Assembly (NCBI GenBank): GCA_002269645.1
Contig: NIVC01003211.1
Coordinates: 3,460-67,459, forward strand
Reading direction: 5' to 3'
DNA from: Macrostomum lignano
Lineage: Eukaryota
DNA: 64,000 nt
Shown here: positions 9,206-35,378 of the stretch, one piece after another
How the letters are laid out: each line of letters opens with the position of its first letter
Numbering within the stretch: the first letter of the stretch is position 1
Translations under genes and position numbers: made by a program
Notes under the pieces: model-generated
Told to the model about the DNA's origin: nothing
Database searches by the model: none
What the model saw: only the letters and a program-made list of their open reading frames with translations

Positions 9206-12200
9206 TCAGTCAGTTGCCATGCCGGTTGTGCAACCCCCAGCGGCAGCACCTGCGGCGGCAGCGGCTCCCCGCCCGCATGCGGCTGAAGGCGGAGCTGGGG
9301 CTGCTGCGGCAGTCGGTGGCCGGCAGGTGGCCAGGATGTGCGGCACGAGGGCCTCCATGGAGACGGAGCCAATTTGCTCTGGTAGGGGAAGGGGGTGGGC
9401 GAAGGCAGCATTCATTATTATTATTATTGGAGTATTTGCTTCACTTGCTACTAGAAGTGCTATTGTTAGACCAGAAGAGGTTAATTTCCTAAATTCCAAA
9501 TCTCAGTTTGCAAATCCCAAATCTCAGTTTCCCAATCCCAAATCTCAGTTTCCAAATCCCAAATCTCAGTTTCCAAATCCCAAATCTCAGTTTCCAAATC
9601 CCAAATCACATTTTCCAAATCCAAAATCTCAGTTTCCCAATTCCAAATCTCAGTTTCCAAATCCCAAATCCCAGATTTCAAATTCCAGATCCCCAATGCG
9701 ATCCCGGTTCCCAGCGGATTCACCAGTAAAGAAGATCTCCTTGATGACGGCCTTGTCGAGGGTCCGCACCGAGTTGGCGTGCAGCAGCAGCCGGGCGAGC
9801 CGGCGCTGGCCGGCCTCAGGCGAGCCCAGGCTGTCGGCCAGGTGGTCGGACAGCTCGGACAGAGTGGCGGCCTGCAGATCGGCCACGATTGAAGCTTCGG
9901 GCTCGTCTTGTACGCAGATCGCTGCGGTGGAATGAGGTGGTTGGTGGCGATTCTCAGGGTGGTTGGTGGCGATTCTCAGGGTGGTTGGGGGCGATTCTCA
10001 GGGTGGTTGGGGGCGATTCTCAGGGTGGTTGGGGGCGATTCTCAGGGTGGTTGGGGGCGATTCTCAGGGTGGTTGGGGGCGATTCTCAGGGTGGTTGGGG
10101 GCGATTCTCAGGGTGGTTGGGGGCGATTCTCAGGGTGGTTGGGGGCGATTCTCAGGGTGGTTGGGGGCGATTCTCAGGGTGGTTGGGGGCGATTCTCAGG
10201 GTGGTTGGGGGCGATTCTCAGAGAGGTTGGGGGCGATTCTCAGGGTGGTAGGGGCGATTCTCGGGGTGGTTGGGGGCGATTCTCGGGGTGGTTGGGGCGA
10301 TTCTCGGGGTGGTTGGGGCGATTGTCATGGTGGTTGGGGGCGATTCTCATGGTGGTTGGGGGCGATTCTCGGGGTGGTTGGGGCGATTGTCAGGGTGGTT
10401 GGGGGCGATTCAGGGTGGTTAGGGCCGGGGGCGATTCTCAGAGAGGTTGGGGGCGATTCTCAGGGTGGTTGGGGGGCGATTATCAGGGATGTTGGGGGCG
10501 ATTCTCAGGGTGGTTGGGGGGCGATTCTCAGGGAGGTTGGGGGGCGATTCTCAGGGTGGTTGGGGGCGATTCTCAGGGTGGTTGGGGGGCGATTCTCAGG
10601 GAGGTTGGGGGGCGATTCTCAGGGTGGTTGGGGGGCGATTCTCAGGGAGGTTGGGGGGCGATTCTCAGGGTGGTTGGGGGCGATTGTCAGGGAGGTTGGG
10701 GGTGATTCTCAGGGTGGTTGGGGCGATTCTCGGGGTGGTTGGGGCGATTGTCAGGGTGGTTGGGGGCGATTCTCAGGGTGGTTGGGGGCGATTCTCGGGG
10801 TGGTTGGGGCGATTGTCAGGGTGGTTGGGGGCGATTCTCAGGGTGGTTAGGGCCGGGGGCGATTCTCAGAGAGTTGGGGGCGATTCTCAGGGTGGTTGGG
10901 GGGCGATTATCAGGGATGTTGGGGGCGATTCTCAGGGTGGTTGGGGGGCGATTCTCAGGGAGGTTGGGGGGCGATTCTCAGGGTGGTTGGGGGCGATTGT
11001 CAGGGAGGTTGGGGGTGATTCTCAGGGTGGTTGGGTCAGACACCCACCTGGCTCGAACATTGTCAGCAGTCGCAGGTACGCGAACTCCACGCCGGTCACC
11101 TGAGAGTCGGTGAACATGCCGACAATCTTCCTGAGTTTCGCCAGCTCAGTCAGCAGCTTGCCGACGTCCGGGCACTGGGAGTCGCCGGCTGTGGGTTTCA
11201 GTTCAGATATGCGCCATCATTTTCTGGCCGAGCTGCCATGAGTATAGCTGATTTTGAGGGTGATTCTCGTGAGTCTAAGGGTCCTGAATAGTTGTTAATG
11301 ATCCTAAATGATTGTTAATGGTCCTGAATGGTTGTTAATGGTCCTAAATGATTGTTAATGGTCCTGAATGGTTGTTAATGGTCCTGAATGGTTTTTAATG
11401 GTCCTGAACGGTTGTTAATGGTCCTGAATGGTTGTTAATGGTCCTGAACGGTTGTTAATGGTCCTAAATGATTGTTATTGATCCTGAATGGTTGTTAATG
11501 GTCCTAAATGATTGTTAATGGTCCTGAATGGTTGTTAATAATCCTGAACGGTTGTTAATGGTCCTAAATGATTGTTAATGGTCCTGAATGGTTGTTAATG
11601 GTCCTAAATGATTGTTAATGGTCCTGAATGGTTGTTAATAATCCTGAACGGTTGTTAATGGTCCTAAATGATTGTTAATGGTCCTGAATGGTTGTTAATG
11701 GTCCTAAATGATTGTTAATGGTCCTGAATGGTTGTTAATGGTCCTGAATGGTTTTTAATGGTCCTGAACGGTTGTTAATGGTCCTGAATGGTTGTTAATG
11801 GTCCTGAACGGTTGTTAATGGTCCTGAATGGTTGTTAATGATCCTGAATGGTTGTTAATGGTCCTAAATGATTGTTAATGGTCCTGAATGGTTGTTAATA
11901 ATCCTGAATGGTTTTTAATGGTCCTGAACGGTTGTTAATGGTCCTGAATGGTTGTTAATGATCCTGAATGGTTGTTAATGGTCCTAAATGATTGTTAATG
12001 GTCCTGAATGGTTGTTAATAATCCTGAATGGTTTTTAATGGTCCTGAACGGTTGTTAATGGTCCTGAATGGTTGTTAATGGTCCTGAACGGTTGTTAATG
12101 GTCCTGAATGGTTGTTAATGATCCTGAATGGTTGTTAATGGTCCTGAATGGTTGTTAATGGTCCTGAATGGTTGTTAATGGTCCTGAATGGTTGTTAATA

Positions 12201-14129
12201 ATCCTGAATGGTTGTTAATGGTCCTGAATGGTTTTTAATGGTCCTGCATGACTATTAATGGTCCTGGATGTTTTTTTATCCCGAAAAACAATTCTGTAGA
12301 GATTCCAACATCCCGCCGCTCTCGAGGCCTCACCAGTAGCCTTGGACAGCAGGTGCTCCGACAGTGCGGAGTGCAGCAGCTGCATGGGCACCCGCCCGGA
12401 GCTCTGGCAGAGGCACAGGGCGAACAGGTCGCACCAGCAGTGCGGCAGCAGGCGGTCGGTGGGCGGCAGGTCCAGGTCCCGGGCCCAGCGGATCATGCGG
12501 AACAGCACCGAGGCCGCCACGAACTTCACGAAGGCGGCGTCAACGGCGCCGGCCGAGGCTCCGGTGGCCGACGACGGCGGTGGCGGGCCCGCGAAAAACG
12601 GCGGCAAGTCGAACTCGGTGAATTCCGGTTCGAGAATTCGCTGCCGACGGCGGGGCGGAGGCGGCGGAGGCGGCGGCGGCGGCGGCTCCAGGGGACTCGG
12701 AGGCCACTCGACGGCATCGTCGAGCTCATCGGACGGCTCGGCGTCGTCTTCTTTGACTCCAATGGTGAGGCCAGCCGTCGAGGTCGAAGACGTGGACGAC
12801 AGGGTCCGGCGCTCGTTCTGCACGGCCTCCGAGCGCATGCCGACGCCGATGCACTTGCGCAGGCGGCAGAACTGACAGCGGTTGCGGAAGGTCTTGTTTA
12901 CCAGGCACTGCCGGCCGCTGCGGCAGCTGTAGTTCACCCGGCGCCGGATCGACCGCTTGAAGAAGCCTTTGCAGCCCTCGCAGCTCACCACGCCGTAGTG
13001 CCGGCCGGAGGCGCGGTCGCCGCACACCCGGCAGGCTTCGTACGACTGCGGCTGCTGTTGTTGCTGCTGCTGGAAGCAATTTGTGCATCGACTATTTTTA
13101 GAATAGACTGCCTACTTGCGAGTAGTGAGAAAGCGAATAGTATCTAGTAGCTTTCCTAGTAGGAAATTAGGAGTTTCCAGTCCAGGCAGCCTCCGTGGTC
13201 CACGGCTGGTCTCTTTTATTTGGGTTTTATTTACCCCTTCCTTATCGCTTGCCCATTCTTCATCAGATTTGCTTTCAATCGGGGTTCAGACGCGACCGAC
13301 CCCTATTCTGACTTGATAAGACAATATCGGCTGAAGGTCGTTGGTTTGCATGTTTATCTGCGCGACTCTGACATCGTGGCAAAAATGGGAAGAAATTTCC
13401 TGGGAACTGGGGCTCGAAAGGAGGGGGGGCTGAAAATGGGACCGTGTCAATGGTCTTTGTTTGCGGACCCAACCAGTGCACCGAACTCAGCGATAAGAAA
13501 TGGTTACCAAATTAGGAAATTGAACCCTGACTAACATTATATTATTACTACTATTCTACTATACTATTATATTCTTACTTATTTTCTGATAAAAAACTGA
13601 ATCTGACTTGGACTTCATTTAGGATGATTCTCAATGAGAGTTGGAGGCGATTCTCAATGAGAGTCGAGGGTGATTATCAATGGGACTTGGAGGCGATTCT
13701 CAATGAGACTTGGAGGTGATTCTCAATAAGACTTGGAGGCGATTCTCAATGAGACTTGGAGGCGATTCTCAATGAGACTTGGAGGCGATTCTTAATGAGA
13801 GTCGAGGGTGATTCTCAATGAGAGTTGGAGGCGATTCTCAATGGGACTTGGAGGCGATTCTCAGTGAGAGTCGAGGGCGATTCTCAATGAGAGTCGAGGG
13901 CGATTCTCACCTGAATCGCGCTGTCGCCGCTCCTGCTCCCATTCGGAGTTCCGTCAAGTTCTGGCGGCTCCACCGCCGCTGCTCGGTGCTGCTGGCGGAC
14001 ATTCGCGCTGGGGCTCCCCGCGGAGACCGACGGCAGAGGGTCGCAGCACTCGCCAGCGGACTTTTTCGCCTGGGCCGCCAGGAGAGAGTGAAGACTGGCC
14101 AGGTGCGGCGGCAAACCTCTGAGACCCAT
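9206..14129 (-). CDS. NR2C2: Orphan nuclear receptor of the TR2/TR4 (NR2C) group, 5 coding exons, about 488 aa
   Basis: Exons 14129-13911, 13069-12334, 11188-11048, 9921-9724, 9378-9206; all GT/AG, phases consistent, total 1467 nt. [33 protein letters not shown]…VQNERR. LBD motifs [20 protein letters not shown]…[21 protein letters not shown] match TR4 EYAYLKAIVLFSP / RLARIL…ELFFTGLIGNVSIDSIIPYIL. NR2C1 vs NR2C2 orthology cannot be resolved. Confidence 0.88.
9490..9690. repeat. 21-bp minisatellite (CCAAATCCCAAATCTCAGTTT) in NR2C intron 4
   Basis: Lies between donor 9723 and acceptor 9379. Confidence 0.9.
9940..11035. repeat. 22-bp G-rich minisatellite (GGGTGGTTGGGGGCGATTCTCA) filling NR2C intron 3
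   Basis: GCGATTC at 9969, 9991, 10013…; occupies almost all of intron 11047-9922. Confidence 0.95.
11278..12265. repeat. 20-bp minisatellite (GGTTGTTAATGGTCCTGAAT) filling NR2C intron 2
   Basis: Period 20; a 120-bp block is repeated around 11890-12130; intron 12333-11189. Confidence 0.95.
13622..13910. repeat. 23-bp minisatellite (GGAGGCGATTCTCAATGAGACTT) beginning exactly at the NR2C intron 1 donor
   Basis: GATTCTC at 13741, 13764, 13787; the sense strand reads GTGAGAATCGCCCTCGACTCTCA from the GT at 13910. Confidence 0.9.
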
Positions 14130-14189: not shown

Positions 14190-14470
14190 TTTAAAATGGC
14201 ACCTTTTAAGATTCAAAATGGCACCCTTTAAGATTCAAAATGGCAACGTTTAGGATGCATAATGGCACCTTTTAGGATTAAAAATGGCACCTTTTAGGAT
14301 TCAAAATGGCACCTTTTAAGATTCAAAATGGCACCTTTTAAGATTCAAAATGGCACCTTTTAAGATTCAAAATGGCAACGTTTAGGATGCAAAATGGCAC
14401 CTGGAGGATTCAAAATGGTACTTTCTAGGATAAAAACTCACATTTAGTTTTTAAAAATGGCACTTTCAAA
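14190..14470. repeat. 22-bp minisatellite (CAAAATGGCACCTTTTAAGATT) just upstream of the NR2C start acceptor
   Basis: Units start at 14302, 14324, 14346; degenerate edges. Confidence 0.85.
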
Positions 14471-14999
14471 CTTCAAAATGACATTATTCGGGGTACAAAT
14501 TGACATTTAGGATATCAATTTAGGATGCAGACTGACTCAGCAGCCAAGGCACCGCGCACTTTCTGCACTTACACACTAAGCCGCTGCAGTGTGGGAGCAC
14601 TTTACTGTGCAAGTCTGGCCGCAAACAGCAATTAATATCCCTGACGATGTGCCAAGCGACCGGCTGCGCTGCTAATATTTCCACTGTATGCGCCAGCGGT
14701 TATTTAAGTCTGTCTGGCCCCGGGGCGGATGTAGCCTGCATTTTTGCATCCCCCATGCCCCAGCCGCCGCAGGGCTAACTCTTCCCAACTTAAAAACTGC
14801 GGAACCCAGACGGGTCATAAATCATTGTGCAGCTGTGCGGCCGGCCAGGGGTCAAGGCGTGCCCCAGTGACGCGATCGGCCCAGGCTCTGCTCTAATTAG
14901 AATTTATGGGGAGCCGGGAACCCATCGAATCTTTACCGCTGCGGAGTGCCTCGGCTGCTGCCCGACAGTTCGTGGCTTCTCCAGCGTGAGACCGGCAAT

Positions 15000-16245
15000 T
15001 TTCTCAGGGGCGATTCTCAGAGAGCGATTCCCAGAGAGCGATTCTCAGAGAGCGATTCTCTGAAAGCGACTCTCAGAGAGCGATTCTTGGAGAGCGATTC
15101 TCTGAAAGCGACTCTCAGAGAGCGATTCCCAGAGAGCGATTCTTAGAGAGCGATTCTCAGAAAGCGACTCTCGAAGAGCGATTCCCAGAGAGCGATTCTC
15201 AGAGAGCGATTCTCTGAAAGCGACTCTCAGAGAGCGATTCTCAGAGAGCGATTCTTGAAGAGCGATTCTCTGAAAGCGACTCTCAGAGAGCGATTCTTAG
15301 AGAGCGATTCTCAGAGAGCGATTCTCAGAGAGCGATTCTCAGAGAGCAATTCTCAGAGAGCGATTCTCAGAGAGCGATTCTCAGAGAGCGATTCTCAGAG
15401 AGCGATTCTCAGAGAGCAATTCTCAGAAAGCGACTCTCGAAGAGCGAATTCTAGAGAGCGAATCCCAGAGAGCGATTCTCAAAAAGCGACTCTTAGAAAG
15501 CGATTCTCAAAGAGCGATTCTTAGAGAGCGATTCTCAAAGAGCGATTCCCAGAGAGCGATTCTTAGAGAGCGATTCCCAGAGAGCGATTCTTAGAGAGCG
15601 ATTCTTAGAGAGCGATTCTCAGAAAGCAACTCTCGAAGAGCGATTCCCAAAAAGCGATTCTCAGAGAGCGATTCTCTGAAAGCGACTCTCAGAGAGCGAT
15701 TCTCAAAGAGCGATTCTTAGAGAGCGATTCTCAGAAAGCGATTCTCAAAGAGCGATTCTTAGAGAGCGATTCTCAGAAAGCGATTCTCAAAGAGCGATTC
15801 TTAGAGAGCGATTCTCAAAGAGCGATTCCCAGAGAGCGATTCTTAGAGAGCGATTCCCAGAGAGCGATTCTTAGAGAGCGATTCTTAGAGAGCGATTCTC
15901 AGAAAGCGATTCTCAAAGAGCGATTCTTAGAGAGCGATTCTCAGAGAGCGATTCTCTGAAAGCGACTCTCAGAGAGCGATTCTCAGAGAGCGATTCTTAG
16001 AGAGCGATTCTCAGAAAGCGACTCTCGAAGAGCGATTCCCAGAGAGCGATTCTTAGAGATCGATTCTCTGAAAGCGACTCTCAGAGAGCGATTCTCAGAG
16101 AACGATTCTTAGAGAGCGGTTCTCAGAGAGCGACTCCCAGAAAGCGCTTCTCAGAAACTGGTCATCAGAAAGCGATTCTCAGAAACTGATCATCAGAAAG
16201 CGATTCTCAGAAACTGATCATCAGAAAGCGATTCTCAGAAACTGA
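15000..16245. repeat. 14-bp minisatellite (GAGAGCGATTCTCA), ending in a 28-bp dimeric variant
   Basis: CGATTC at 15361, 15375, 15389; CAGAAAGCGATTCTCAGAAACTGATCAT units at 16140-16245. Confidence 0.95.
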
Positions 16246-16896: not shown

Positions 16897-16979
<83 letters not shown>

Positions 16980-17217: not shown

Positions 17218-17248
<31 letters not shown>

Positions 17249-17480: not shown

Positions 17481-17513
<33 letters not shown>

Positions 17514-18200: not shown

Positions 18201-21200
18201 TCATACTGGTTCTCCTGCCCTGCCTGTCCGACCCCTCGTGGCCGGGACTGACGGGCTTAGCCGCTGGGTCTGATTTACCGCTGCAGTGTCAGTGTCTTTG
18301 AGATTCCCTCTGCTCCAGAGAATTATCCAATTGAAATTCCCAATTGCTCAGAAAAGATCCCAGCTTTAAAACTGCTAGCTTATGAGAATCATGCTTTGAA
18401 ATTCCCTTTGGTACAGAAATTTCCCAACTTTGAGATTCTTCCTTACCCCAGAGAATTCCCTAACTTTGAGATTCCCCTTACCCCAGAGAATTCTCCAACT
18501 TTGAGATTCCCCTTACTCTAGAAAATTCCCTTACTTTGAGATTCCCCTTATCACAGAGAATTCCTTTACTTTGAGATTCCCCTTATCACAGAGAATTCCT
18601 TTACTTTGAGATTCCCCTTATCACAGAGAATTCCCTTACTTTGAGATTCCCCTTACCCCAGAGAATTCCCTTACTTTGAGATTTCCCTTACCCCAGAGAA
18701 TTCCCTAACTTTGAGATTTCCCTTACCCCAGAGAATTCCCTAACTTTGAGATTTCCCTTACCCCAGAGAATTCCCTAACTTTGAGATTTCCCTTACTCCA
18801 GAGAATTCTCCAACTTTGAGATTCCCCTTACCCCAGGGAATGCTCCAGAGAATTCTCCAACTTTGATATTCCCCTTACCCCAGGGAATGCTCCAGAGAAT
18901 TCTCCAACTTTGATATTCCCCTTACCCCTAGGGAATGCTCCAGAGAATCTCAGAGCCGTGAGTCAGCGAGTCTCTATACTAAAAGGCAGTCACTACCCAT
19001 TGTTAGAGTTAGAAAATATGCTGTTTACAAAACTTAACTATACTCGTACAACTATATGCGCAAGGCAAGGTCAAAATGCGCAAGAGTGTGCAGGGGTTAC
19101 CCAGCGAGAGCTTAACAGACCCGTTGCAATACATAACAATTCATATTAATACTATTACTAATACTAAACCTAAACTATTAAATAATGTACTTCACTGCAT
19201 CACAATGTGTTTACGCTAAACTGCGCTACGCTTTGGCCTATTTTTAAATTCCTTTATCTTAGACAAGACGAGAATAGGGAGGATAATGATTGGGGATATC
19301 TTGACAGGCAGGACAACAAACTTCTCTGAGCACTATTATAAGCTAGAGCTCATAATTAATAATAAGATAATAAAACAGTATCATCGATTTAAACAAAAAA
19401 GCCTGATAGTTAAATGACAAGCTGCGGACTAAGTCTGGACTGGATCATGGACTGCTAGCCCATGGGTGACAGCTGCATGACACTCAAAAGTACTAGAAGA
19501 TAGTATCATATAGGAGATTAAAACGGATTAGTTAGGATCATTATGTCACACAAATTGATTTATTAGGACCATAATGACACAACAACACACCCATTAGGAC
19601 CATAATGACACCCTAACAGACTCATTAGGTCTTAGGATCATAATGACACCCCAACAGACTCATTAGGTCTTAGGACCATAATGACACCCTAACAGACTTA
19701 TTGGGACCATAATAACATCCCAACACACTCATTGGGACCATAATGACACCCCAACACTCTAACACACCCATTAGGACCATATTGACACCCTAACACACCC
19801 ATTAGGACCATAAGGACACCCTAACACACTCATTAGGACCATAATGACACCCCAACACACTCATTAGGACCATAATGACACCCTAACACACTCCTTATGA
19901 CCATAATGACACCCCAACACACCCATTAGGACCATAATGACACCCTAACACACTCATTATGACCATAATGACACCCTAACACACCCATTAGGACCATGAG
20001 GACACCCTAACACACTCATTAGGACCCTAATGACACCCCAACAGACTCATTAGGTCTTAGGACCATAATGACACCCCAACAGACTCATTAGGTCTTAGGA
20101 CCATTATGACACCCTAACAGACTCATTAGGTCTTAGGATCATAATGACACCCCAACAGACTCATTAGGTCTTAGGACCATAATGACACCCTAACAGACTC
20201 ATTGGGACCATAATGACACCCTAACAGACTCATTAGGTCTTAGGATCATAATGACACCCCAACAGACTCATTAGGTCTTAGGACCATAATGACACCCTAA
20301 CAGACTCATTGGGACCATAATGACATCCCAACACACTCATTGGGACCATAATGACACCCCAACACACTCATTGGGACCATAATGACACCCAACACACTCA
20401 TTGGGATCATAATGACACTCTAACACACCCATTAGGACCATAATGACACCCCAACAGACTCATTAGGACCATAATGACACCCCAACAGACTCATTAGGAC
20501 CATAATGACACCCCAACAGACTCATTAGGATCATAATGACACCCCAACACACTCATTAGGATCATAATGACACCCCAACAGACTCATTAGGATCATAATG
20601 ACACCCCAACACACTCATTAGGATCATAATGACACCCCAACACACTCATTAGGACCACAATGACACCCCAACAGACTCATTAGGATCATAATGACATCCC
20701 AACAGACTCATTAGGATCATAATGACACCCCAACACACTCATTAGGACCACAATGACACCCCAACAGACTCATTAGGATAATAATGACACCCCAACAGAC
20801 TCATTAGGATCATAATGACACCCCAACAGACTCATTAGGACCGTATCAGACAAGATTCATTTAAATGACCCCAAGACAAGGGTTTACAGTAGAAAGCCTG
20901 CACTCACCAACAAGTGAGGCGAAGATTTCATCAGTTCGGCCAGGGGGGGCATCAGCAGGCCGGAGCCATGCGGATGTCCAGGTGCAAATGGACGGCCGGC
21001 CATCAGCTGAGGCGGCGGCTGCTGCTGCCCGCGACCTCCATAGAAGAAACTCCCGCTGTTGTCGCATCCCTCGGTAGTTCTGTGCATTCTATCCGTCTGT
21101 CTGTCCAGTGTCCAATATGTTTTAGAACCGTGAGCAGAAAACCTTCAGTCAAGATAAGCGAGCGACATTTGCATGTGAATAGTGCGGAGGCCGTACGCTA

Positions 21201-26165: not shown

Positions 26166-26541
26166 GGACAGTCCCGCATGGTCCACATATCCAGTAAATA
26201 AACTAAACAAAAGCGTACTTTAACCAATGTTAGGCATTCAATGTTGCACTAGACAACAACAACAGGATGTCGCGTAAATTAAGTGAAGCAAAACTCACGC
26301 GATAGCCAGCTGGTTAATCATTCTATTTTGATGTCGGTATTCGAGACAGCAAGGGCAATGGGAGACGGGGAGAAAACCTGACGCCGCGGCTAGGGAAACA
26401 GTTATTACAAGACTTGACGACAAATCAGCCGCATTAACTGCGTGTTACACAAAAGATCGTCAGCAAAAAATGAGACATTGTTAATAGCTGAATGGCGAAC
26501 GAACAAAGAACTCAGTAGTTGCAGATCCCACAGCTGCTGCG

Positions 26542-26765
26542 CTACCAGTAGTTACCGTAGCCGCCCTGGTCGCCGCCCCGACCTCCGTAACCGCGACCGC
26601 CGCCTCCGCCGCCCGTGGCACCGCCGCCGCCTGTTGCCATGCTTGTCACCTGGGCCAGGGCGGCCGCCAGAACCTGCGGATTCGAGGCCAGGACGTTCAC
26701 CACATCCTGATAGACCCCGGAGCCGCCAGGCGCGCCGCCCGAACCGATCTGGCCGCCGCCGGGGC

Positions 26766-26799
<34 letters not shown>

Positions 26800-28381
26800 C
26801 ATTGGCTGCCAGCCACGGCCTCGCGGTGGTCCCATCTGGTGGCCGCCACCCCGGCCGCCTCGCATCTGGCCCAGGCCGCCACCCGAAAAGCCGAGGCTCC
26901 CGCCGTGCTTCGGAATCGCGGTGCCAACGTGGACCGTAGTGCCCTCGATGTCGAAGTCCTGCCCGACCAGGCGATCGACGGTGGTTGAGTCGGCAAAGGT
27001 GACGAAGGCGAAGTTGCGGAACGGCTTGGGGATGTACACTTCCTCCACCGTGCCGTGCTGGTTAAAGAAGTCCTTCAACACCTGGCTGGTCATCTCCTCC
27101 GTGATGCCGCCGACGAAAACGCGGCGAGGCACGCTGGCCGGGGCGGCCGGCTCGCCCTGGCTGATCGGCACCTTCACCTCGCACCAGCGGTTCTGGGCGG
27201 CAGAGCGGGGAGCAATTTGAGACAAAAAATTGGGGGCGATTCTTAACGGTAGCTGGGTGGAGGGGCAATTCTCAATGGTAGCTGGGGGGGGGGCAATTCT
27301 CAATGGTAGCTGGGGGGGGGCAATTCTCAATGGTAGCTGGGGGGAATTCTCAATGGTAGCTGGAGGGGGGGCAATTCTCAATGGTAGCTCAGTAGCTGGG
27401 GGGGGGCAATTCTCAATGGTAGCTGGGGGGAATTCTCAATGGTAGCTGGAGGGGGGGGGCAATTCTCAATGGTAGCTCAGTAGCTGGGGGGGCAATTCTC
27501 AATGGTAGCTGGTGGGGAGGGGAAATTCTCAATGGTAGCTCAGTAGCTGGGGGGGGGCACTTCTCAATGGTAGCTGGGGGGGGGCAATTCTCAATGGTAG
27601 CTGGGGGGCGCAATTCTCAATGGTAGCTGGGGGGGGGCAATTCTCAATGGTAGCTGGTGGAGAGGGGCAATTCTCAATGGTAGCTGGGGGGGGCAATTCT
27701 CAATGGTAGCTGGGGGGGGCAATTCTCAATGGTAGCTGGGGGGGGGGGCAATTCTCATTGGTAGCTGGGGGGGGCATTCTTAATGGTTGGGGGCGATTTT
27801 TCAGCAGGCCAGGGGCCCAGAAAAAGCAGCAAAGTCCCGCGCAGTCGCACCATTATCTGATGTCTAGGGCAGGTCAGACAGTCGATCTGGGACTCGAACT
27901 CGGCAAACCGAATGAACCCGTAGCCCCGACTGCCGCCCTGCGAGTCCCGCTTGATCTGCGACATGACCAGCTCGCCGAACTTGGAGAAATAGCTCTTCAA
28001 ATCCTCTTCGTTGGCTTTGTAAGGCAGGCCGAGCACAATCAGGTCTGTGCACTTTTTCCTGTCCGGCTTCTTCGGCCGGAAGTCGGGCGCGTCGCCGAGT
28101 TCCTCGTCCACTTTGCGTTTGTTGTCCTTGGGAAAGGTGCACAAGTAGACCACGTTGCCGTTGTGACTCCAGGAGTTGAACTCCGGCGGCGGGTACAGTA
28201 CACCGTCCGTGAGGCGCACTGCCCGCATGGCGCTGGTGTCCGGGTTGCGGTAGCGCAGGCCGGTGAGGCCGGGGAACTGCGCGGCCAGGGTGGACAGCAG
28301 CAGGACTCCGCCGGCCTCGGTGGGCACCTCTATCGGGTCGTCGCCCTCGTCCTCAGCAACTGGCACGTATTCGACAGCCAT
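26542..28381 (-). CDS. TARDBP: TAR DNA-binding protein 43 homolog, copy A (393 aa)
   Basis: Exons 28381-27851 and 27192-26542 (phase 0, HQIM|NRWCEVKVP). NTD (PIEVPTE…LLLSTLAAQFPG…GLRYRNP), RRM1 (DLIVLGLP…RGYGFIRF), RRM2 (RRVFVG…PKPFRNFAFVTF), Gly-rich tail. Confidence 0.95.
27230..27800. repeat. About 24-27-bp minisatellite (G7-9 CAATTCTCAATGGTAGCT) filling the TDP-43A intron
   Basis: Unit length varies with the G-run; intron 27850-27193. Confidence 0.92.
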
Positions 28382-28512
28382 GGCTGGTGCGATTCACTGC
28401 AAAATTGGACAATTTCGATGGGGGAATTGCTGCCTGATTACCGCTAGTAACTAAGTGCACCTACATGCCGATACTACATATTTGTCTACTATCTATCTAC
28501 CAATCGATCTAT

Positions 28513-28600
28513 GGGGGGCGTAGCTTAGTAGTCAAATGGCGCTCTGATGTGCCAGCGGCCCAGGCTCGATTCTCCAAGTGCAGTCACATTAATTTGGGCT
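28513..28600 (+). mobile_element. Degenerate tRNA-derived (SINE-like) head, copy A
   Basis: A-box-like TAGCTTAGTAG at 28521, B-box-like GGCTCGATTC near 28563; paralogous to 35553-35630. No complete cloverleaf seen. Confidence 0.4.
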
Positions 28601-29479
28601 AAGTTGGAATCTCGGCTTGGCTCTGCTCGTGCAATCACGCCCTTGAGGACCAACCCCCAAGACACAGTGTACATGGCTAGCCATAAATATAGCCAGGGCC
28701 GCTGTACACTCCCCTGTGTGAGCCTGTGCGTATGACTGCGTACGTATCTGCGCGCTTGTTTGCCTGCTCAGGGGAGTCGGCGGAATGGGCAGTAATGCCT
28801 CTCGCCGGTTGTGTGACAATGTCGCTTAAAGTGCGCCAGGGTGCACACAACCCCCCTGCCTCTAATAATAAAAATACCAATATATATACTATCTTATCTG
28901 CCTATTATTATATTATCTGCCAATTTATCTGCTAACAATGCACCGCCCATCTGCCAATTAATTAACCATGTTTATCTAACCTAACAAGAACCACCAAACA
29001 CGACAGGCTGTTAAGCTGAAAATAATAATCATAACTAGTGAAAACAATACAATTATAACTGTTGGCTCGCCATCAGAAATGAAATCACACGGAACTCGCG
29101 ACTCCCAGCTACAGTTACCGGGGTAGCCGATGCTCAAATCAGGCAAAACCGCAGTTAACTTACTGAAAACACTGCCGAGCTCTTCAACTCAGAGGTCATC
29201 TCAGGTCAAGCGAGAGATAAACAGCCCTAAAGTTCATCACGACTGGCGTATAAACAAGCACTGGAAACAAATCGATTGAAAATAGCAGAAATATCAACGA
29301 TAACAACAGCAAGTTCAGCGCACAAACTGCGGCAAATGTCTACATTGAATGCAAATTGACAAACAATATGAAATGCATGATTAACAAGGCAGTACAGCGT
29401 AAATTCTTTCACATCTTCACTTTTAAATCCTCAACCTTCATATTCACCACCCTTATCCTCATCTTTCTATCCCCAACCA

Positions 29480-30000
29480 TCATAACTCAACCTTCATATG
29501 CCACACCATCATACCACCCATCTTCATATCCCCAAACTTCATATCCCCAACCATCATACCCCCCATCTTTATATCCCCAACCCTTATATCCCCAACCCTT
29601 ATATCCCCAACCTTCATATCCCCAAACTTTATATCCCCAACCTTCATATCCCCCATCTTTATATCCTCAACCTTCATATCCCCAAACTTTATATCCCCAA
29701 CCTTCATATCCCCCATCTTTATATCCTCAACCTTCATATCCCTATATTTATATCCCCAACCTTCATATCCCCCATCTTTATATCCTCAACCTTCATATCC
29801 CTATATTTATATCCCCAACCTTCATATCCCCATAATAATATCCCCAACCTTCATATCCCCATAATCATATCCCAAACTTTATATCCCCAACCTTCATATC
29901 CCCATAATCATATCCCTAAACTTTATATGCCCAACCTTCATATCCCCATATTTATATCCCCAACCTTCATATCCCCATATTTATATCCCCAACCTTATTG
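29480..30000. repeat. 15-bp minisatellite (ATATCCCCAACCTTC) with 30/45-bp higher-order variants
   Basis: Expanded only in duplication copy A; copy B has 1-2 units at about 35955-35985. Confidence 0.9.
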
Positions 30001-30191
30001 TGAAAATTGTCTCATCGGTCAAACAGTGACCCCCTCTCAGTTGCTACCCTACCTTCATCATAGCTGCATCGCAGACTCTCAACAATTCCACATAAATCCC
30101 AAACACTAAACACGTACAGAAAAGAAACAAATGTTTAACACGCAACGAAAAGTCATTGGCTCACACACAATCACTAATAAAGTCAAGACAA

Positions 30192-30204
30192 AGGTCAAAG
30201 GTCA
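30192..30204 (+). promoter_or_regulatory. Perfect DR1 nuclear-receptor element AGGTCA-A-AGGTCA (copy A)
   Basis: Exact consensus; function inferred only. Confidence 0.35.
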
Positions 30205-30571
30205 AAAGCTGTCTGCACCCGACGCATCAATCCAAGGCCAGGCTCAACTCAGCTCAAAGTCAGTCCCTGGCGCAGCCGGAGCAACACAGACTGACTGATA
30301 GACACAGATCGGCGCACAGGACTGCGAATTTAATTAAATCAATCTAATCAATCAGCTCATTCCAATGGGATACCTCCAGCAGGCTGGGTGCTCGGGCAGA
30401 TCTTCCTGAGCACCTGGCATCGGGTACAGGGACATCACGTGACCTGGCTCTCGGCCGCCGCTGAGCTGAAATTATGAGCTAATTTGTTTAAGTAAGAATT
30501 CACGTCATTGAAGAATAAAGATTGCTCTTGGTAGACATCTCCTAACACTGGGACTCTGGTGCATAAAATGG

Positions 30572-30780
30572 GGATTCGGGTGTTTGAAATGGGGATTTGG
30601 GGTGTTTGAAATGGGGATTTGGGGTGTTTAAAATGGGGATTCGGGGTGTTTGAAATGGGGATTTGGGGTGTTTGAAATGGGGATTTGAATGTTTGAAATG
30701 GGGATTTGGGTGTTTGAAATGGGGATTTGGGTGTTTGAAATGGGGATTTGGGGTGTTTGAAATGGGGATTGAGATGGTTG
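30572..30780. repeat. 21-22-bp minisatellite (GAAATGGGGATTTGGGGTGTTT) at the duplication junction
   Basis: About 10 units; abuts the TDP-43B 3' flank at about 30785. Confidence 0.9.
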
Positions 30781-31111
30781 AAATGTACTACACAACAGCA
30801 ACAGGATATCGCGTAAATTAATTGAAGCAAAACTCACGCGATAGCCAGCTGGTTAATAATTGTATTTGATGTCAGCATTTGGGAAAGCAAGGGCGATGGG
30901 AGTCGGGGGGGGGGGCACTGTCGCCAGCTTGGACTACAGATTTATTACAAGACTTGACAACAAATCAGTCGCATTGGCTTGGGTAACCAGTTCGACAATT
31001 TTGACTGCGTGCTACACAAACATCGACAGAGAATTTTGTAATAAAATTGTTAATAGATGGATGACGAACGAACAAAGAATTTCAGTTGTTGCAGATTCCA
31101 CAGCAGCTGCG

Positions 31112-34100
31112 CTACCAGTAGTTACCGTAGCCGCCCTGGTCGCCGCCCATGGCCCCGCCGCCGCCTGTTGCCATGCTGGTCACCTGGGTCAGGGCGGCCG
31201 CCAGAACCTGCGGGTTCGAGGCCAGGACGTTCACCACATCCTGGGAGACCCCGGAGCCGCCAGGCGCGCCGCCCGAACCGATCTGGCCGCCGCCGGGGCC
31301 ACCGCCGCCGCCGCCGCCGCCGCCGCCCATTGGCTGCCACCCACGGCCTCGCGGAGGCCCCATCTGGGCGCTGCCACCCCGGCCGCCGCGCATCTGGCGG
31401 CCACCAGGGACGCCGATGCCGCCGCCGTACTTCGGAATGACGGTGGCAACGTGGATCGTTTTGCCCTCGATGTCGAAGTCCCGCTCGACCAGGCGTTCGA
31501 CGGTGCTTGAGTCGGCAAAGGTGACGAAGGCGAAGTTGCGGAACGGCTTGGGGATGTACACCTCCTCCACCGTGCCGTGTTGGCTAAAGAAGTCTTTTAA
31601 CACCTCGCTGGTCATCTCCTCCGTGACGCTGCCGACGAAAACGCGGCGAGACTCGCCGACCGGGGCGGCCTGGCTGATCGGCACCTTCACCTCGCACCAG
31701 CGGTTCTGGGCGGCAGAGCGGGGGGGGGGGGGTGATTTGATGAGACAACAAATTGAGGGCGATTCTGAATGGTAGCTGGGTGGGGATTCTTACTGGTGGG
31801 GCCGATTACGAATGGTGTTCTGACTCGTAAGAGTGTATTTGAATTTTTTCAAGTATCCTAGGTCGGGCTTGTGACCGACTGTCTCTTAGGATCGAATTGC
31901 ATATATTTCTCACAGCGAAGAGAAGGGAAAATAGTTTAGTTTATTTAGGGCGTTATTCAATATTACTGAGTGTGACCATAGTTAAAATATAGCGCTGGCA
32001 GCCCGAACTACGGCATACCCCCTTTTAGGAAAATAACGGTTAACAACTACCAATGAACAATAAATTGCGATGCTTTTGCAAGTGTCTGTTGCTATCGAAA
32101 TTGAGTTGTCAGTTTTTTTGCAATTTTTTCCTATGGCTGATTTCGGCCAGGCATTCGCCGGACCCTTGTGCCCCTTTTTGGGGTCTCTTCGTTGGATTGG
32201 GCCACATAAGGCTCAACGGCTTGAGATGGGCCGTTGGTGACCTAAGTTGTTGGCTCAACACGATGATCAACTTCTTCATCGGACGTACTAGTAGTAGATG
32301 ATTGCTGCAGGCCCAGTTGATTGTTGCTGGCCAGCTTGAGGGTGTCGCCCGCCAGCAGTCATGATGTGTTCCGTCCTCGGGTCATTAGGAACATTGCCTC
32401 GGAGCACGGAGTGTCGGCATTTGGCTTTTAGGCTACTAGATCACCTTGCTGGAAGGTTGACACGATACGAACGCGTAATGGACGTCAAAAATGATTTCAA
32501 CAGGCGTCTTTCCATGCGAGGTTGACGAATATTTGTGGTGCAGCAGAACCTTCTGCAAAAAGGCAATAAATGTGGAGTGAGTCATGCGTTGGGTCCAGGC
32601 CCGAAGTGCCTTTTTCACGGTTTGCACGGTCCGTTCAGCAAGACGGTTGGACTGCAGTGAGTATGGAAGGGTCTCCATCTTCGGCGCTCCATTGGCTTCC
32701 AACCAGGACACCAAAGAGGCCGAGGTGAATTCTGCTCCGTTGTCAGACACAATCACTTGTGGGACACCGAATCGAGTAAAAACAGTACGCAAGCAGTTGA
32801 TGACCTTGTTCGTGGACCGATCTTTTGTTGGGAAAGCCTCAATAGAGCCGGAGTATGCGTCCACAACGATGAGAATGTTGCCTACCTCAGGTATGAATAC
32901 CTAGTCCTTGTGAAGCCGTTGGAACGGAAAGCTCGTAGGTGGCCAAACGTCTCTTATCTTCTGTAGACGAGGTCGCAGCCGAATATAACTGGGACATTGA
33001 TGCACGAACTGCTCGACATCGCGCTGCATTCCAGGCCACTAGCAGATCTGAGCCAGTAGGTTGTAGGAACCATCTTTCTTTTTGACCCAACGACAGGCGA
33101 TGAATTACTCACACGGCCTTCAATTCTCCCAATAACGCTCAGTTGCTCGAGTCTGTCCAGCTCAGCGTTGATCTGGCTCTCCAGTGCAATGGGCACAGGG
33201 CGGGCTCGGCAGAACTGCGGTCTGGCTCCATCGACCAACTCCATTCGAGCCGTGACGCCCTTATTGGTGGCAGGGGTTCGACCGTATGAGCCACGGATGT
33301 CTGGAAAATTGAGTCGGAATCCAGCAAGTCGCGTCCCAACAAATGTAATTGTTTTGTTGAAGCGACAACCATGAGCTCGGTCGGATGGAGACGGCCTTGC
33401 ATCTCGACGGTGGTGAGGAGCTTTCCTAACGTTTTGAGAGTGTGGCCATCATAGGCTTCAAGGCGCCGGTGACACTTGTAGCGCTGGTCGATGCAGTGAC
33501 TCCCAGAGATTGCTTGATATCACGAACACAGATGTGCCTGTGTCCACTTGCATTGGAATCGCAATTTACCATCAATGAGAATATATTCAGTTGCCACGGA
33601 TAGATTATGGACGAGATCAACGTCGGTAAGATGAAGGACTTCAGAGATGTCAGAGTCGGAAGCGTCAGTCGTCGTCTTTGCATGATGAATACCTGGTACC
33701 TGCTGATGATCGGCACACCGATCCGAAATGATTGAGTTTGTTGCATTTGGAGCATGTCTTGCCAAAGGCAAAGGCAGGACATTTCCCAGTGGGGTGGGAT
33801 TTGCCGCAGAATTTGCAATTATCAACACGACGTCGGTCTCTACCGAGTTTGGAAGGGCCGCCATTGTGCACTTGCTTTTATAATTTGCAAAGTGAATTTC
33901 TCCGTCTTCGAGTTGAACCGCAATGGGCTTTTGGACTCCCGAAGTTTCACGATCTCTCACAAAGGTCTTCACTTGTTCCAAATTTTGGATTTCATCAACG
34001 ATCTCTGCCACATTAAGTTCCTTTTTTTGGAGGATTACCAAAATGTGGCGCTGATGTTCGGCGTTGCACAGACCTACGATGAGGGACAGAAGCACCATTT

Positions 34101-35378
34101 CTTCTTCTGTACTGATACATGTTTTGAGAGAGTCAAACTTGCAGTATGCCGCAGCCTGGCGAACACAGGAGAGAAACTTGGTGATCGACTCATTTGCGGC
34201 TTGACGTTGTGGGGAAAATTTTGTTCGTTTTGCTACCACGACGCGCTTTGGGTTGTAGGAAACGGAAAGTGTTGATCGCTGCCTCGATATTGCTAAGGCG
34301 CAGTCTCAATATCCTTTGGGCTTTGGAGCGAAAATACTGGTGATTATCTCTAGAGCTGATAATCCACAGACTGGCAAGAAATTGTCTGCGATTTGTCGGT
34401 AGTCTGCTGTATCATCCCACTTCTTTGCTCGTCCCAGGGCTTCAAAGGCCTTCAACCAGGTAAGTGCGCGATCCAGATCGGCCAGGTCCAAACTATCGAG
34501 TCGCAACGCCATTGTAGCCAGATAAACTTCAATTATCTGAGGTCGGGCTCGTGGCTGAGTGCAGCGTAGCCAGAATTGCATTCCTACGTGTATATTTCTT
34601 ACAACGAAGAGAAGGGAAAATAATTAAGGGCTTTATTCAATATTACCGCGTGACCATAGATAGTTAAAATACCGATTCTCAATGGTAGGGAGCGATTCTC
34701 AATGGTTGGGACGACTCTCAATGGATTTGGGCGATTCTCAACTGTTGGGTGGGAGACATTCTAAATGATTAATTGTTCAGGGGGGGGGGGCGTTTTCTTA
34801 GCAGGCCAGGGGCCCAGAAAAAGCCGCCAAGTCCCGCGCAGTCGCACCATTATATGATGCTTCGGGCAGGTCAGACAGTCGATCTGGGACTCGAACTCGG
34901 CAAACCGAATGAACCCGTAGCCCCGACTGCCGCCTTCCGAGTTCCGCTTGATCTGCGACATGACCAGCTCGCCGAACTTGGAGAAATAGCTCTTCAAATC
35001 CTCTTCGCTAGCTTTGAAGTGCAGGCCGAGCACAATCAGGTCTGTGCACTTTTTCCTGTCCGGTTTCTTCGGCCGGAAGTCGGGCGCGTCGCCGGGTTGC
35101 TCGTCCACTTTGCGCTTGTTGTCCTTGGGAAAGGTGCACAAGTAGACCACGTTGCCGTTGTGACTCCAGGAGTTGAACTCCGGCGGCGGGTACAGTACAC
35201 CGTCCGTGAGGCGCACTGCCCGCATGGCGCTGGTGTCCGGGTTGCGGTAGCGCAGGCCGGTGAGGCCGGGGAACTGCGCGGCCAGGGTGGACAGCAGCAG
35301 GACTCCGCCGGCCTCGGTGGGCACCTCTATCGGGTCGTCACCCTCGTCCTCAGCAACTGGCACGTATTCGACTGACAT
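31112..35378 (-). CDS. TARDBP: TAR DNA-binding protein 43 homolog, copy B (374 aa)
   Basis: Exons 35378-34848 and 31705-31112 (phase 0). Same domains as copy A, shorter Gly-rich tail; 3.1-kb intron contains an LTR element. Confidence 0.93.
31830..34670 (-). mobile_element. Internally deleted, degenerate Ty3/Gypsy LTR retrotransposon in the TDP-43B intron
   Basis: Gag (34581-33520) with zinc knuckle CKFCGKSH…CSKCNKLNHFGSVC; RT start (PIALESQINAELDRLEQ…SPVV) joined directly to the integrase zinc-binding region (WPGMQRDVEQFV..C); rve core (VDAYS…FGVPQVIVSDNG…SNRLAERTVQTVK). Diverged direct repeats at about 31830-32017 and 34530-34670; polypurine tract AAAAGGGGG near 32018-32026 (minus strand). 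Confidence 0.88.
34675..34765. repeat. Four or five degenerate ~20-bp GCGATTCTCAATGG units in the TDP-43B intron
   Basis: Homologous to the 27230-27800 array; a further unit at about 31745-31790 lies on the other side of the LTR element. Confidence 0.8.

What the first reader, a model, noticed from the sequence alone, without database searches (positions are those of the whole stretch)
9940..34765. One 10-bp core (GCGATTCTCA / GCAATTCTCA) is shared by intronic minisatellites of five different periods, always in the same orientation
Seen: the 22-bp array (NR2C intron 3), 23-bp array (NR2C intron 1), 14-bp array (15000-16245), ~25-bp array (TDP-43A intron) and ~20-bp units (TDP-43B intron) differ in flanks and period but all carry GC(G/A)ATTCTCA on the plus strand. 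The transcript would read UGAGAAU(C/U)GC. A lone GGTGATTCTC also ends the 20-bp array near 11270. Known: human minisatellites share a core (Jeffreys core) proposed to promote turnover. Inference: a core-seeded minisatellite system spreads between introns of unrelated genes, either by gene conversion or template switching, or because a protein binds the motif in DNA or pre-mRNA. Strict strand polarity relative to transcription favours a functional or co-transcriptional explanation.
Basis: partly seen in the sequence, partly recalled or inferred. Interest (0 to 1): 0.78.

Follow-up and report, generated by a model that had tools for sequence, protein, structure and literature searches.

The report
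Related minisatellite family in flatworm introns
Several neighbouring tandem-repeat arrays in the introns of two Macrostomum lignano (flatworm) genes are diverged copies of one ancestral repeat of about 20 bases, so this looks like an ordinary dispersed repeat family, not evidence for a strand-specific functional motif.

Summary
GCRATTCTCA occurs 91 times (0.41 expected), all on the + strand, in arrays of period 22, 23, 14, about 27 and about 20. The window is Macrostomum lignano. The hosts are an NR2C-like nuclear receptor and two tandem TDP-43 genes, all on the minus strand.

- The arrays share more than a 10-bp core. Units align over 15-20 bases, and the 15-mer TGGTTGGGGGCGATT of the 22-bp array recurs at the edge of the TDP-43A array. 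They are one family from an ancestral monomer of about 20-22 bp.
- The TDP-43A and TDP-43B arrays are the same array, copied by a segmental duplication. They now differ in period and core variant, so a different period does not mean an independent origin.
- Only 3-5 independent placements remain, all within 25 kb and all in co-oriented genes. Uniform polarity is therefore not significant (P about 0.06-0.25).
- A diverged 35-bp array at 18290-18960 is probably an inverted relative.
- Within arrays the core is no better conserved than the rest of the unit.

The genome-wide test could not be run. Moderate-to-low interest: a new member of a known kind.

The parts
9936..11035 (+). 22-bp array (about 50 units, + strand GGTGGTTGGGGGCGATTCTCAG). 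It fills 98% of NR intron 3 (9922-11047).
   Evidence: higher-order period of about 426 bp
11254..12270 (+). NR intron 2. An edge unit with a canonical core (GGGTGATTCTCGTGAGTCTAA, 11257-11279) is followed by a 20-bp array (11276-12270, TAATGGTCCTGAATGGTTGT). The array is probably a diverged family member in the same orientation.
   Evidence: unit-to-unit alignment z = 5.5 against the TDP-43B unit
13626..13909 (+). 23-bp array (12 units) at the donor end of NR intron 1 (13070-13910). The donor GT is at 13910-13909 and the first core copy is at 13909-13900, so the 5' splice site GTGAGAAUCGCC is made by the first repeat unit.
15001..16239 (+). 14-bp array (about 88 units, GCGATTCTCAGAGA, higher-order periods 28/56/280), upstream of the NR start codon (ATG at 14129). 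It could lie in a 5'UTR intron, an outron or the promoter; which one is unknown.
23887..23919 (+). Lone complete monomer (GGTGCAGTGCGATTCTCAAGGCGTGGCTTGGGC) in non-coding DNA.
27232..27800 (+). 27-bp array (about 20 units, core variant GCAATTCTCA) filling 85% of the TDP-43A intron (27193-27850). Both edge units keep the GCG variant, and the right edge carries the 22-bp array's 15-mer TGGTTGGGGGCGATT (27784-27798).
31755..31826 (+). Left remnant (about 3 degenerate units) of the TDP-43B intron array, cut off by a retroelement insertion.
34673..34749 (+). Right remnant (about 4 units of about 20 bp, CGATTCTCAATGGTTGGGAG) of the TDP-43B intron array. This unit is the most similar to all the other family members.
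18290..18960 (-). 35-bp array. Its + strand reads TTTGAGATTCCCC / CAGAGAATTCCC, which resembles the reverse complement of the family unit. It is probably an inverted, diverged relative. It lies in non-coding DNA upstream of the NR gene, and whether it is transcribed is unknown.
9206..14129 (-). Host gene 1: NR2C/TR4-like nuclear receptor, 5 coding exons (14129-13911, 13069-12334, 11188-11048, 9921-9724, 9378-9206), 488 aa, all introns GT-AG.
26542..28381 (-). Host gene 2: TDP-43A, 2 coding exons (28381-27851, 27192-26542), 393 aa.
31112..35378 (-). Host gene 3: TDP-43B, the tandem paralogue, 2 coding exons (35378-34848, 31705-31112), 374 aa, intact reading frame.
31845..34672 (-). Degenerate LTR-type retroelement (integrase-core ORF 32436-32864; direct repeats of about 140 bp at both ends) inserted into the TDP-43B intron array.
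26245..36751 (.). Tandem segmental duplication: 26245-30785 matches 30784-36751 at 78-96% identity. It copied the TDP-43 gene, its intron array and the upstream 22-bp array.

Best explanation
This is one family of homologous minisatellite arrays in the Macrostomum lignano genome. All descend from an ancestral monomer of about 20-22 bp, roughly GGGRGCGATTCTCARTGGTTG on the + strand.

Copies were placed at a handful of nearby non-coding sites: NR introns 1, 2 and 3, the NR upstream region, and the TDP-43 intron, which was later duplicated along with its gene. The route was non-inverting local duplication, ectopic conversion or template switching (inferred).

Each array then evolved on its own by slippage and unequal exchange, that is, by concerted evolution. 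Different indels and G-run lengths were fixed in the variable tail of the unit, which gives periods of 14, 20, 22, 23 and 27.

The '10-bp core' is simply the part of the ancestral monomer that these indels have not yet disrupted. The uniform orientation follows from shared descent through a few direct duplications in a block of co-oriented genes.

No function of the motif needs to be invoked. The arrays are mostly intronic filler in a genome where every intron seen here carries some minisatellite.
For: **Shown.**
- Similarity between units extends beyond the core. Alignment scores are 29-40 against a null of about 10, and always in the same orientation. Units registered on the core share GRRGC upstream and RTGGT/TGGTTGG downstream.
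- The exact 15-mer TGGTTGGGGGCGATT of the NR intron 3 array recurs at the edge of the TDP-43A array.
- The TDP-43A and TDP-43B arrays sit at the same intron position inside a segmental duplication of 78-96% identity. They now differ in period, copy number and core variant.
- In the TDP-43A array the interior units are homogenised to GCA, while both edge units keep GCG. This is the classic signature of concerted evolution.
- Higher-order periods (28/56/280, 69/138, about 426) show that blocks of units were duplicated.
- Within arrays the core is no better conserved than the rest of the unit: 0.92 vs 0.90 in the 14-bp array, and flat in the 22-bp array.
- A 20-bp array that has lost the core still keeps a canonical edge unit.
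- All 8 introns that could be modelled in the window contain a tandem array of some family.
- Simple and tandem repeats make up about 15% of this genome (PMC5730564).
- Other repeat families in the window also recur in direct orientation: the 28-bp unit at 8373 and 38191, and (TCTG)n three times.

**Inferred.** The route of dispersal, and the neutrality of the arrays.
Against: - Across arrays the 10 core positions are far better kept than the tail. Pure drift does not predict that. It could reflect a constraint or a mutational property, since the tail is made of slippage-prone G runs.
- How a short array lands in another gene's intron 11-14 kb away is not shown.
- The probable inverted relative at 18290-18960 needs at least one inverting event.
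- The arrays at NR introns 1 and 3 begin exactly at the donor site. The donor is in register with the unit's YTGAG, which hints at some interplay with splicing signals.
- Only one 64-kb window of the genome could be examined.
Confidence: 0.6

Rival explanations
1. Transposon-seeded arrays. The monomer is the internal or subterminal tandem repeat of a non-autonomous mobile element (MITE or Helitron type). The element inserted into several introns, and its repeat then expanded until the element's ends were lost.
For: - Repeat-carrying Helitrons and MITEs are a known way for short arrays and single monomers to disperse (PMC10048060).
- A lone monomer exists at 23887-23919.
- The family occurs in unrelated genes.
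- The genome is rich in transposons (PMC5730564).
Against: - Self-comparison of the window finds no shared non-repeat flanks, terminal inverted repeats or other second copies next to the arrays.
- In NR introns 1 and 3 the array runs up to the splice sites, leaving no room for element termini.
- All copies lie within 25 kb, which looks local rather than genome-wide. Only this window was seen.
Confidence: 0.15
2. Functional or co-transcriptional element. The sense-strand RNA motif YUGAGAAUCGCC, or the DNA motif, is bound by a factor or propagated in a transcription-coupled way, so arrays are kept in one polarity relative to the host gene.
For: - All exact cores are antisense on the + strand in minus-strand genes.
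- The core is the best-kept part of the unit between arrays.
- The sense core is one base away from the species' donor consensus GT[G/A]AG (PMC8629364), and it supplies the real donor of NR intron 1.
- If the region at 18-24 kb is transcribed on the + strand, the inverted 35-bp array would also be in sense polarity.
- An intronic minisatellite linked to splicing regulation is known in C. elegans (CeRep25B, PMC4039745).
Against: - Only 3-5 independent placements exist, all hosts are on one strand and all are adjacent, so P for uniform orientation is about 0.06-0.25.
- There is no extra conservation of the core within arrays.
- The core CpG decayed to CpA and was fixed in the TDP-43A array.
- The core was lost altogether in the NR intron 2 array.
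- Introns are not enriched as sites: about 4 of 7 family elements lie in introns, and introns make up about a third of the local non-coding DNA.
Confidence: 0.1
3. Orientation filter by splicing constraints. Arrays spread in either orientation. In introns, only the orientation that avoids strong cryptic splice signals survives. On the + strand the 22-bp unit reads TTCTCAG|G, which is acceptor-like, followed by GTGGTT, which is donor-like.
For: - Over whole arrays the sense strand is poor in GT: 0-21 per kb, against 34-245 per kb on the antisense strand and 41 per kb in unique intron sequence.
- Y5AG acceptor-like sites occur at 30-50 per kb on the + strand of the 22- and 14-bp arrays and at 0-6 per kb on the sense strand.
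- Strandedness of intronic tandem repeats is known in other animals (PMC3152781).
Against: - Given the base composition of each unit, the lack of GT is not significant (P = 0.4-0.7 for the family units).
- Only 5 of 7 intronic units have fewer GT on the sense strand.
- The TDP-43A array carries acceptor-like C-run+AG sites on the sense strand.
Confidence: 0.1
4. Replication-linked polarity. The G-run-bearing strand makes arrays expand or persist only in one orientation relative to fork direction, so arrays within one replicon share orientation.
For: - The + strand of the arrays is strongly G-skewed (GC skew +0.47 at 10-12 kb), with G5-G9 runs in every unit.
- Orientation-dependent instability of G-rich minisatellites is established in yeast models (my own knowledge; not checked here).
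Against: - The G runs are 17-20 bases apart, which is poor for canonical quadruplexes.
- The 14-bp and 23-bp arrays have no G runs.
- There are no replication data.
Confidence: 0.05

Closest known systems
Jeffreys-type human minisatellite families sharing a core (my own knowledge: Jeffreys, Wilson and Thein 1985)
   Same: - Arrays at several loci have different unit lengths but share a conserved block of 10-15 bp.
- The founding member is intronic (myoglobin).
- The core was proposed to promote array turnover.
   Different: - Here the units align over most of their length, so this is a family by descent, not a set of unrelated units with a common core.
- The core is not G-rich or chi-like.
- All known copies lie within 25 kb.
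- Hypervariability and recombination activity were not tested.
CeRep25B minisatellite of Caenorhabditis elegans (PMC4039745)
   Same: - A unit of about 24 bp.
- Copies are clustered regionally on a chromosome.
- About 75% of copies are in introns, and others may lie in outrons of trans-spliced genes.
   Different: - CeRep25B is nearly palindromic.
- It contains known splicing regulatory motifs.
- It is statistically linked to alternative splicing genome-wide.

None of these is shown here.
Dispersed euchromatic satellite-DNA families and tandem repeats carried by Helitrons and MITEs (review PMC10048060)
   Same: Short arrays and single monomers of one family are scattered in gene-rich DNA. Each array is homogenised on its own, with higher-order repeats.
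   Different: - No transposon termini or shared flanks were found next to the arrays in this window.
- The monomer is much shorter than typical satellite units.
Strand-biased intronic tandem repeats (Daphnia pulex, PMC3152781)
   Same: Repeat motifs in introns can show strong preference for one strand relative to the gene.
   Different: That bias concerns short T-rich microsatellites counted genome-wide. Here the sample is a few related minisatellites in three co-oriented genes, and the bias is not statistically established.

Membership tests
Dispersed minisatellite family by common descent (concerted evolution) | Head-to-tail arrays with a unit of 10-100 bp | tested here: met
   Tandem Repeats Finder reports periods 14/28, 20, 22, 23 and 27, with 4 to about 88 copies.
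Dispersed minisatellite family by common descent (concerted evolution) | Units from different loci align over most of their length, not only at a short core | tested here: met
   Alignment scores of 29-40 against a null of about 10. A shared 15-mer, TGGTTGGGGGCGATT. See also the alignment.
Dispersed minisatellite family by common descent (concerted evolution) | Units are more alike within an array than between arrays, and array edges keep older variants | tested here: met
   In the TDP-43A array the interior is GCA and the edges are GCG. The NR intron 2 array keeps a canonical edge unit.
Dispersed minisatellite family by common descent (concerted evolution) | Higher-order repeat structure from duplication of blocks of units | tested here: met
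Dispersed minisatellite family by common descent (concerted evolution) | Many loci across the genome | not testable with these tools
   No other M. lignano DNA could be reached. The metagenome scan returned unrelated sequences.
Jeffreys-type core minisatellites | Otherwise unrelated units that share only a short core | tested here: not met
   The flanks of the core are homologous too.
Jeffreys-type core minisatellites | G-rich, chi-like core (GGGCAGGAXG) | tested here: not met
   The core is GCGATTCTCA.
Jeffreys-type core minisatellites | Hypervariable copy number and recombination hotspot activity | not testable with these tools
   This needs population or pedigree data.
Transposon-borne tandem repeats (Helitron or MITE) | Arrays bounded by conserved element termini, with target-site features | tested here: not met
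   No shared non-array flanks within the window. In NR introns 1 and 3 the arrays abut the splice sites.
Transposon-borne tandem repeats (Helitron or MITE) | Many dispersed copies with the same flanks genome-wide | not testable with these tools
   Only this window is available.
Intronic splicing-regulatory repeat (CeRep25B-like) | The motif is more constrained than neighbouring positions within arrays | tested here: not met
   Core vs flank identity is 0.92 vs 0.90 (14-bp array), flat in the 22-bp array, and 0.94 vs 0.86 (23-bp array, 12 units).
Intronic splicing-regulatory repeat (CeRep25B-like) | Sense-strand orientation bias relative to host genes on both strands | tested here: inconclusive
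   All hosts are on the minus strand, with 3-5 independent placements. A possible inverted relative lies in DNA of unknown transcription.
Intronic splicing-regulatory repeat (CeRep25B-like) | Enrichment in introns over other non-coding DNA | tested here: inconclusive
   About 4 of 7 family elements lie in introns, and introns are about one third of the local non-coding DNA. Every intron carries some array anyway.
Introner-like or transposed introns | The element supplies its own splice sites and makes up the whole intron | tested here: inconclusive
   The NR intron 1 donor lies in the first unit. The first 22 bases of NR intron 3, donor included, match the unit at 15 of 22 positions. The acceptors and the TDP-43 donor lie in unique sequence.
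Introner-like or transposed introns | Intron positions absent from orthologues | not tested
   No orthologous gene structures were available.

The most novel reading that the evidence does not exclude
In M. lignano a transcription-polarised minisatellite family spreads among introns. Its sense-strand unit is a 'G-less' 5' splice site (YUGAGAAU, one base from the species' GT[G/A]AG donor) followed by a C-rich tract.

Under this reading, arrays arise from or are captured at donor sites. They can supply the working donor, as in NR intron 1. They persist only in sense polarity because they interact with the splicing machinery, for example as pseudo-donor pads for U1 snRNP.

If the + strand of 18-24 kb is transcribed, the inverted 35-bp array would also fit this rule.
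Probability: 0.08. Interest if true: 0.7.

Novelty: new member of a known kind. Interest (0 to 1): 0.3.

Why it matters
M. lignano is a regeneration and stem-cell model. Its genome is hard to assemble because of simple and tandem repeats. Knowing that intron-filling minisatellites fall into families related by descent helps in several ways:
- repeat annotation and gene modelling;
- design of transgenes and knock-ins;
- choice of variable markers.

If the genome-wide test did show sense-strand polarity, this would become a tractable case of a repeat family shaped by splicing. On present evidence it is ordinary repeat biology.

Tried and rejected
1. **Spliced-leader origin.** The core region looks a little like part of the M. 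lignano spliced leader (sequence from PMC8629364). Alignment is not better than shuffles (P = 0.23-0.98). Rejected.
2. **Hairpin at the NR exon 1 / intron 1 junction.** GCGATTC...GAATCGC forms a 7-bp stem around the donor, but the fold is no better than shuffles (z = -0.64). Rejected as chance.
3. **GT depletion on the sense strand as proof of selection.** It is striking in raw counts but not significant once unit composition is taken into account. Kept only as a weak rival.
4. **Metagenome scan** for two cores 14-30 bp apart. It returned 120 loci. The ones with arrays that I examined were mostly coding repeats of period 15 or 18; some are pentapeptide-repeat-like proteins. All were unrelated contigs. 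Not informative.
5. **Reaching other M. lignano loci.**
   - Exact-protein look-ups of a window ORF and of the UniRef SHPK protein found no contigs.
   - A search with the translated 22-bp array found nothing.
6. **Rfam and tRNA scans** of the window found nothing.
7. **Literature search** for M. lignano minisatellite families found only general statements on repeat content.
8. **Protein-coding host for the 35-bp array.** There is no GC3-rich ORF between 14.2 and 26.4 kb.


Full report
**Observation.** GCRATTCTCA has 91 exact matches against 0.41 expected, all on the + strand. With one mismatch allowed the counts are 152 on + and 1 on -. Tandem Repeats Finder gives arrays at 9936-11035 (period 22), 13626-13909 (23), 15001-16239 (a 14-bp unit, reported as 28/42), 27232-27787 (27) and 34673-34749 (20). 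A lone unit sits at 23887-23919. The lone GGTGATTCTC is at 11259-11268.

**Organism and genes.** A sedoheptulokinase exon in the window is 100% identical to a Macrostomum lignano UniRef protein, so the window comes from this flatworm. Its genome is reported to be about 15% simple and tandem repeats (PMC5730564).
- The first host gene has a DNA-binding domain that best matches human NR2C2/TR4. It has five coding exons and four GT-AG introns on the minus strand.
- Two tandem TDP-43 genes, both with intact reading frames and one intron each, are also on the minus strand.
- The arrays nearly fill their introns: 98% of NR intron 3, 87% of NR intron 2, 85% of the TDP-43A intron, 60% of NR intron 4 and 34% of NR intron 1.
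- All eight introns I could model in the window, including two in the sedoheptulokinase gene, contain a tandem array of some family.
- The 14-bp array lies upstream of the NR start codon. An AG directly precedes the ATG, so the array could be in a 5'UTR intron, in an outron of a trans-spliced message, or in the promoter. This is not settled.

**The arrays are one family, not unrelated units with a common core.** Registered on the core, the units read:
- GATTCTCA-GGGTGGTTGGGGGC (22)
- GATTCTCA-ATGGTTGGGAGC (20)
- AATTCTCA-ATGGTAGCTG(G)nC (27)
- GATTCTCA-ATGAGACTTGGAGGC (23)
- GATTCTCA-GAGAGC (14)

Circular unit-to-unit alignments score 29-40 against about 10 for shuffled units, always in the same orientation. 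The alignment shows a shared GRRGC before the core and RTGG/TGGTTGG after it. The 15-mer TGGTTGGGGGCGATT, typical of the NR intron 3 array, occurs exactly once elsewhere, at the right edge of the TDP-43A array (27784-27798). A variant unit of the 22-bp array (GATTCTCAGAGAGGTTGGGGGC) differs from the 14-bp unit only by an 8-base deletion. The TDP-43B unit is the one most similar to all the others, so it is probably closest to the ancestral monomer.

**A natural experiment.** Self-comparison shows a tandem segmental duplication: 26245-30785 matches 30784-36751 at 78-96% identity. The TDP-43A and TDP-43B arrays lie at the same place in the paralogous introns, with homologous unique sequence on both sides. 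They are therefore one ancestral array.
- In TDP-43B a degenerate LTR-type retroelement (integrase ORF, direct repeats of about 140 bp at the ends) landed inside the array and split it.
- In TDP-43A the array now has about 20 units of about 27 bp with the core variant GCAATTCTCA. Both edge units still have GCG.
- GCG to GCA is a CpG transition that was then spread through the array.

So a single array has changed period and core variant since the duplication. Different periods therefore do not indicate independent origins, and the core is not immutable. The same pattern appears in NR intron 2. A unit with a canonical core sits at the edge of a 20-bp array whose interior unit (GGTCCTGAATGGTTGTTAAT) still resembles the family (z = 5.5) but has lost the core.

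**Constraint on the core.** Within arrays the core positions are not better conserved than the rest of the unit: 0.92 vs 0.90 in the 14-bp array, flat in the 22-bp array, and 0.94 vs 0.86 in the small 23-bp array. Between arrays the core is clearly the best-kept block. This may be because the tail consists of slippage-prone G runs and takes the indels. It may also reflect some constraint. I cannot separate the two with one window.

**Polarity.** After removing non-independence, there are three to five separate placements: NR intron 3, NR intron 1, NR upstream, perhaps NR intron 2, and one TDP-43 event. All lie within 25 kb and all are in genes on the minus strand.
- If orientation were random, all placements would agree with probability 0.25 to 0.06. 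Local direct duplication would make agreement the default.
- Polarity relative to transcription cannot be separated from polarity along the chromosome here.
- Other repeat families in the window also recur in direct orientation: the 28-bp unit at 8373 and 38191, and (TCTG)n at 7350, 16811 and 39973.
- A 21-bp array in NR intron 4 is an inverted relative of the 22-bp arrays at 30566 and 36531.
- The 35-bp array at 18290-18960 aligns better to the reverse complement of every family member than to the forward strand. P = 0.007-0.017 against four members, <0.003 against a TDP-43A variant unit with which it shares GAGAATTCCC, and 0.087 against the 23-bp unit. It is probably an inverted, diverged member.
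- That array lies in a 12-kb stretch with no GC3-rich ORF, so its relation to transcription is unknown. If that stretch is transcribed on the + strand, the array would in fact keep sense polarity.

**Splicing-related observations.** The M. lignano donor consensus is GT[G/A]AG and the trans-splice acceptor motif is [T/C]TNCAG (PMC8629364).
- On the sense strand the core reads YTGAGAAT, one base from a donor.
- In NR intron 1 the first unit has G at that position and provides the working donor (CAG|GTGAGAATCGCC).
- In NR intron 3 the first 22 bases, donor included, match the unit at 15 of 22 positions and in register.
- On the + strand the 22-bp unit reads TTCTCAG|G followed by GTGGTT. The opposite orientation would therefore put an acceptor-like and a donor-like site in every unit.
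- Raw counts show GT at 0-21 per kb on the sense strand of the large intronic arrays, against 41 per kb in unique intron sequence.
- Given each unit's base composition this is not significant, and only 5 of 7 intronic units have fewer GT on the sense strand.

Selection against cryptic splice sites is thus a possible orientation filter. It is not demonstrated.

**What could not be done.** The decisive test is genome-wide, and no other M. lignano DNA was reachable. The metagenome scan returned unrelated sequences; the arrays I examined were mostly coding repeats of period 15 or 18. The literature held here gives only general repeat content for this genome.

**Comparison with known systems.**
- The best analogy for behaviour is a dispersed satellite or minisatellite family evolving by concerted evolution, as reviewed in PMC10048060.
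- The C. elegans CeRep25B minisatellite (24-bp unit, regionally clustered, 75% intronic, PMC4039745) is a close precedent for the location pattern.
- The Jeffreys-core analogy holds for the surface pattern, a shared block with varied periods. It fails on two defining features tested here: the units are related beyond the core, and the core is not G-rich or chi-like.
- A transposon origin is not supported by flanks in this window, but it cannot be excluded.

**Verdict.** It is best explained as one locally dispersed, independently homogenised minisatellite family (confidence about 0.6). The claim that strict polarity points to function is not supported by the numbers available. It is a new member of a known kind, of modest interest. 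The genome-wide orientation test is cheap and would settle the matter.

Noticed in passing
window 9379-13910, 27193-27850, 31706-34847, 38948-40282: Every intron that could be modelled (8 of 8: four in the NR gene, one in each TDP-43 gene, two in the sedoheptulokinase gene) contains a tandem array. In the six NR and TDP-43 introns the arrays occupy 34-98% of the intron in five cases, and are reduced to remnants around a retroelement in TDP-43B. They belong to at least four sequence families. Introns here are largely minisatellite.
   Followed up: partly
window 26245-36751: A tandem segmental duplication (78-96% identity) gives two TDP-43 genes with intact reading frames (393 and 374 aa). The B copy carries a degenerate LTR-type retroelement (31845-34672) inserted inside its intron array.
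   Followed up: yes
window 13900-13913 and 11026-11047: The donor of NR intron 1 (CAG|GTGAGAAUCGCC) is formed by the first repeat unit. The first 22 bases of NR intron 3, donor included, match the repeat unit at 15 of 22 positions and in register. On the sense strand the unit is one base from the species' GT[G/A]AG donor consensus.
   Followed up: partly
window 8373-9072 and 38191-38474; 7350-8031, 16811-17702 and 39973-40192: Other repeat families also recur about 10-30 kb apart in the same orientation: a 28-bp unit (GGATCTGGGAGGCTGGCCCAGCAACTGA) twice, and (TCTG)n three times. They are not explained by the TDP-43 duplication.
   Followed up: partly
window 9485-9691 vs 30566-30785 and 36531-36969: The 21-bp array in NR intron 4 is an inverted relative of the 22-bp arrays (AAATGGGGATTTGGGGTGTTTG) upstream of the TDP-43 genes. 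At least one minisatellite family in the window therefore occurs in both orientations.
   Followed up: partly
window 4607-6594: A very regular 46-bp array: 43 copies at 95% identity, T-rich on the + strand. It lies just downstream of a GC3-rich + strand ORF (3591-4271) of unknown family.
   Followed up: no
window 47371-47652 and 48015-48548: Two adjacent arrays (19 and 17 bp, 95-97% identity) with related, nearly palindromic units (GTTTCTATGAAAC / TTTCTACGAAA). They lie between two GC3-rich minus-strand ORFs (46911-47333 and 48543-49193), so they are probably in an intron.
   Followed up: no
window 60027-62144: A GC-rich block with + strand ORFs. One has a weak tyrosine-recombinase (Phage_integrase) match at 61737-62144, which suggests a Crypton- or DIRS-like mobile element.
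   Followed up: partly
window 14200-26400: A 12-kb stretch with no GC3-rich ORF lies between the NR first coding exon and the TDP-43A last exon. It is made largely of arrays: 22-bp, 14-bp, (GTCT)n, 35-bp, 31-bp, (TTCCA)n and 30-bp. The arrays at 18-23 kb are GT-poor on the + strand, the opposite of the intronic arrays in the minus-strand genes.
   Followed up: partly
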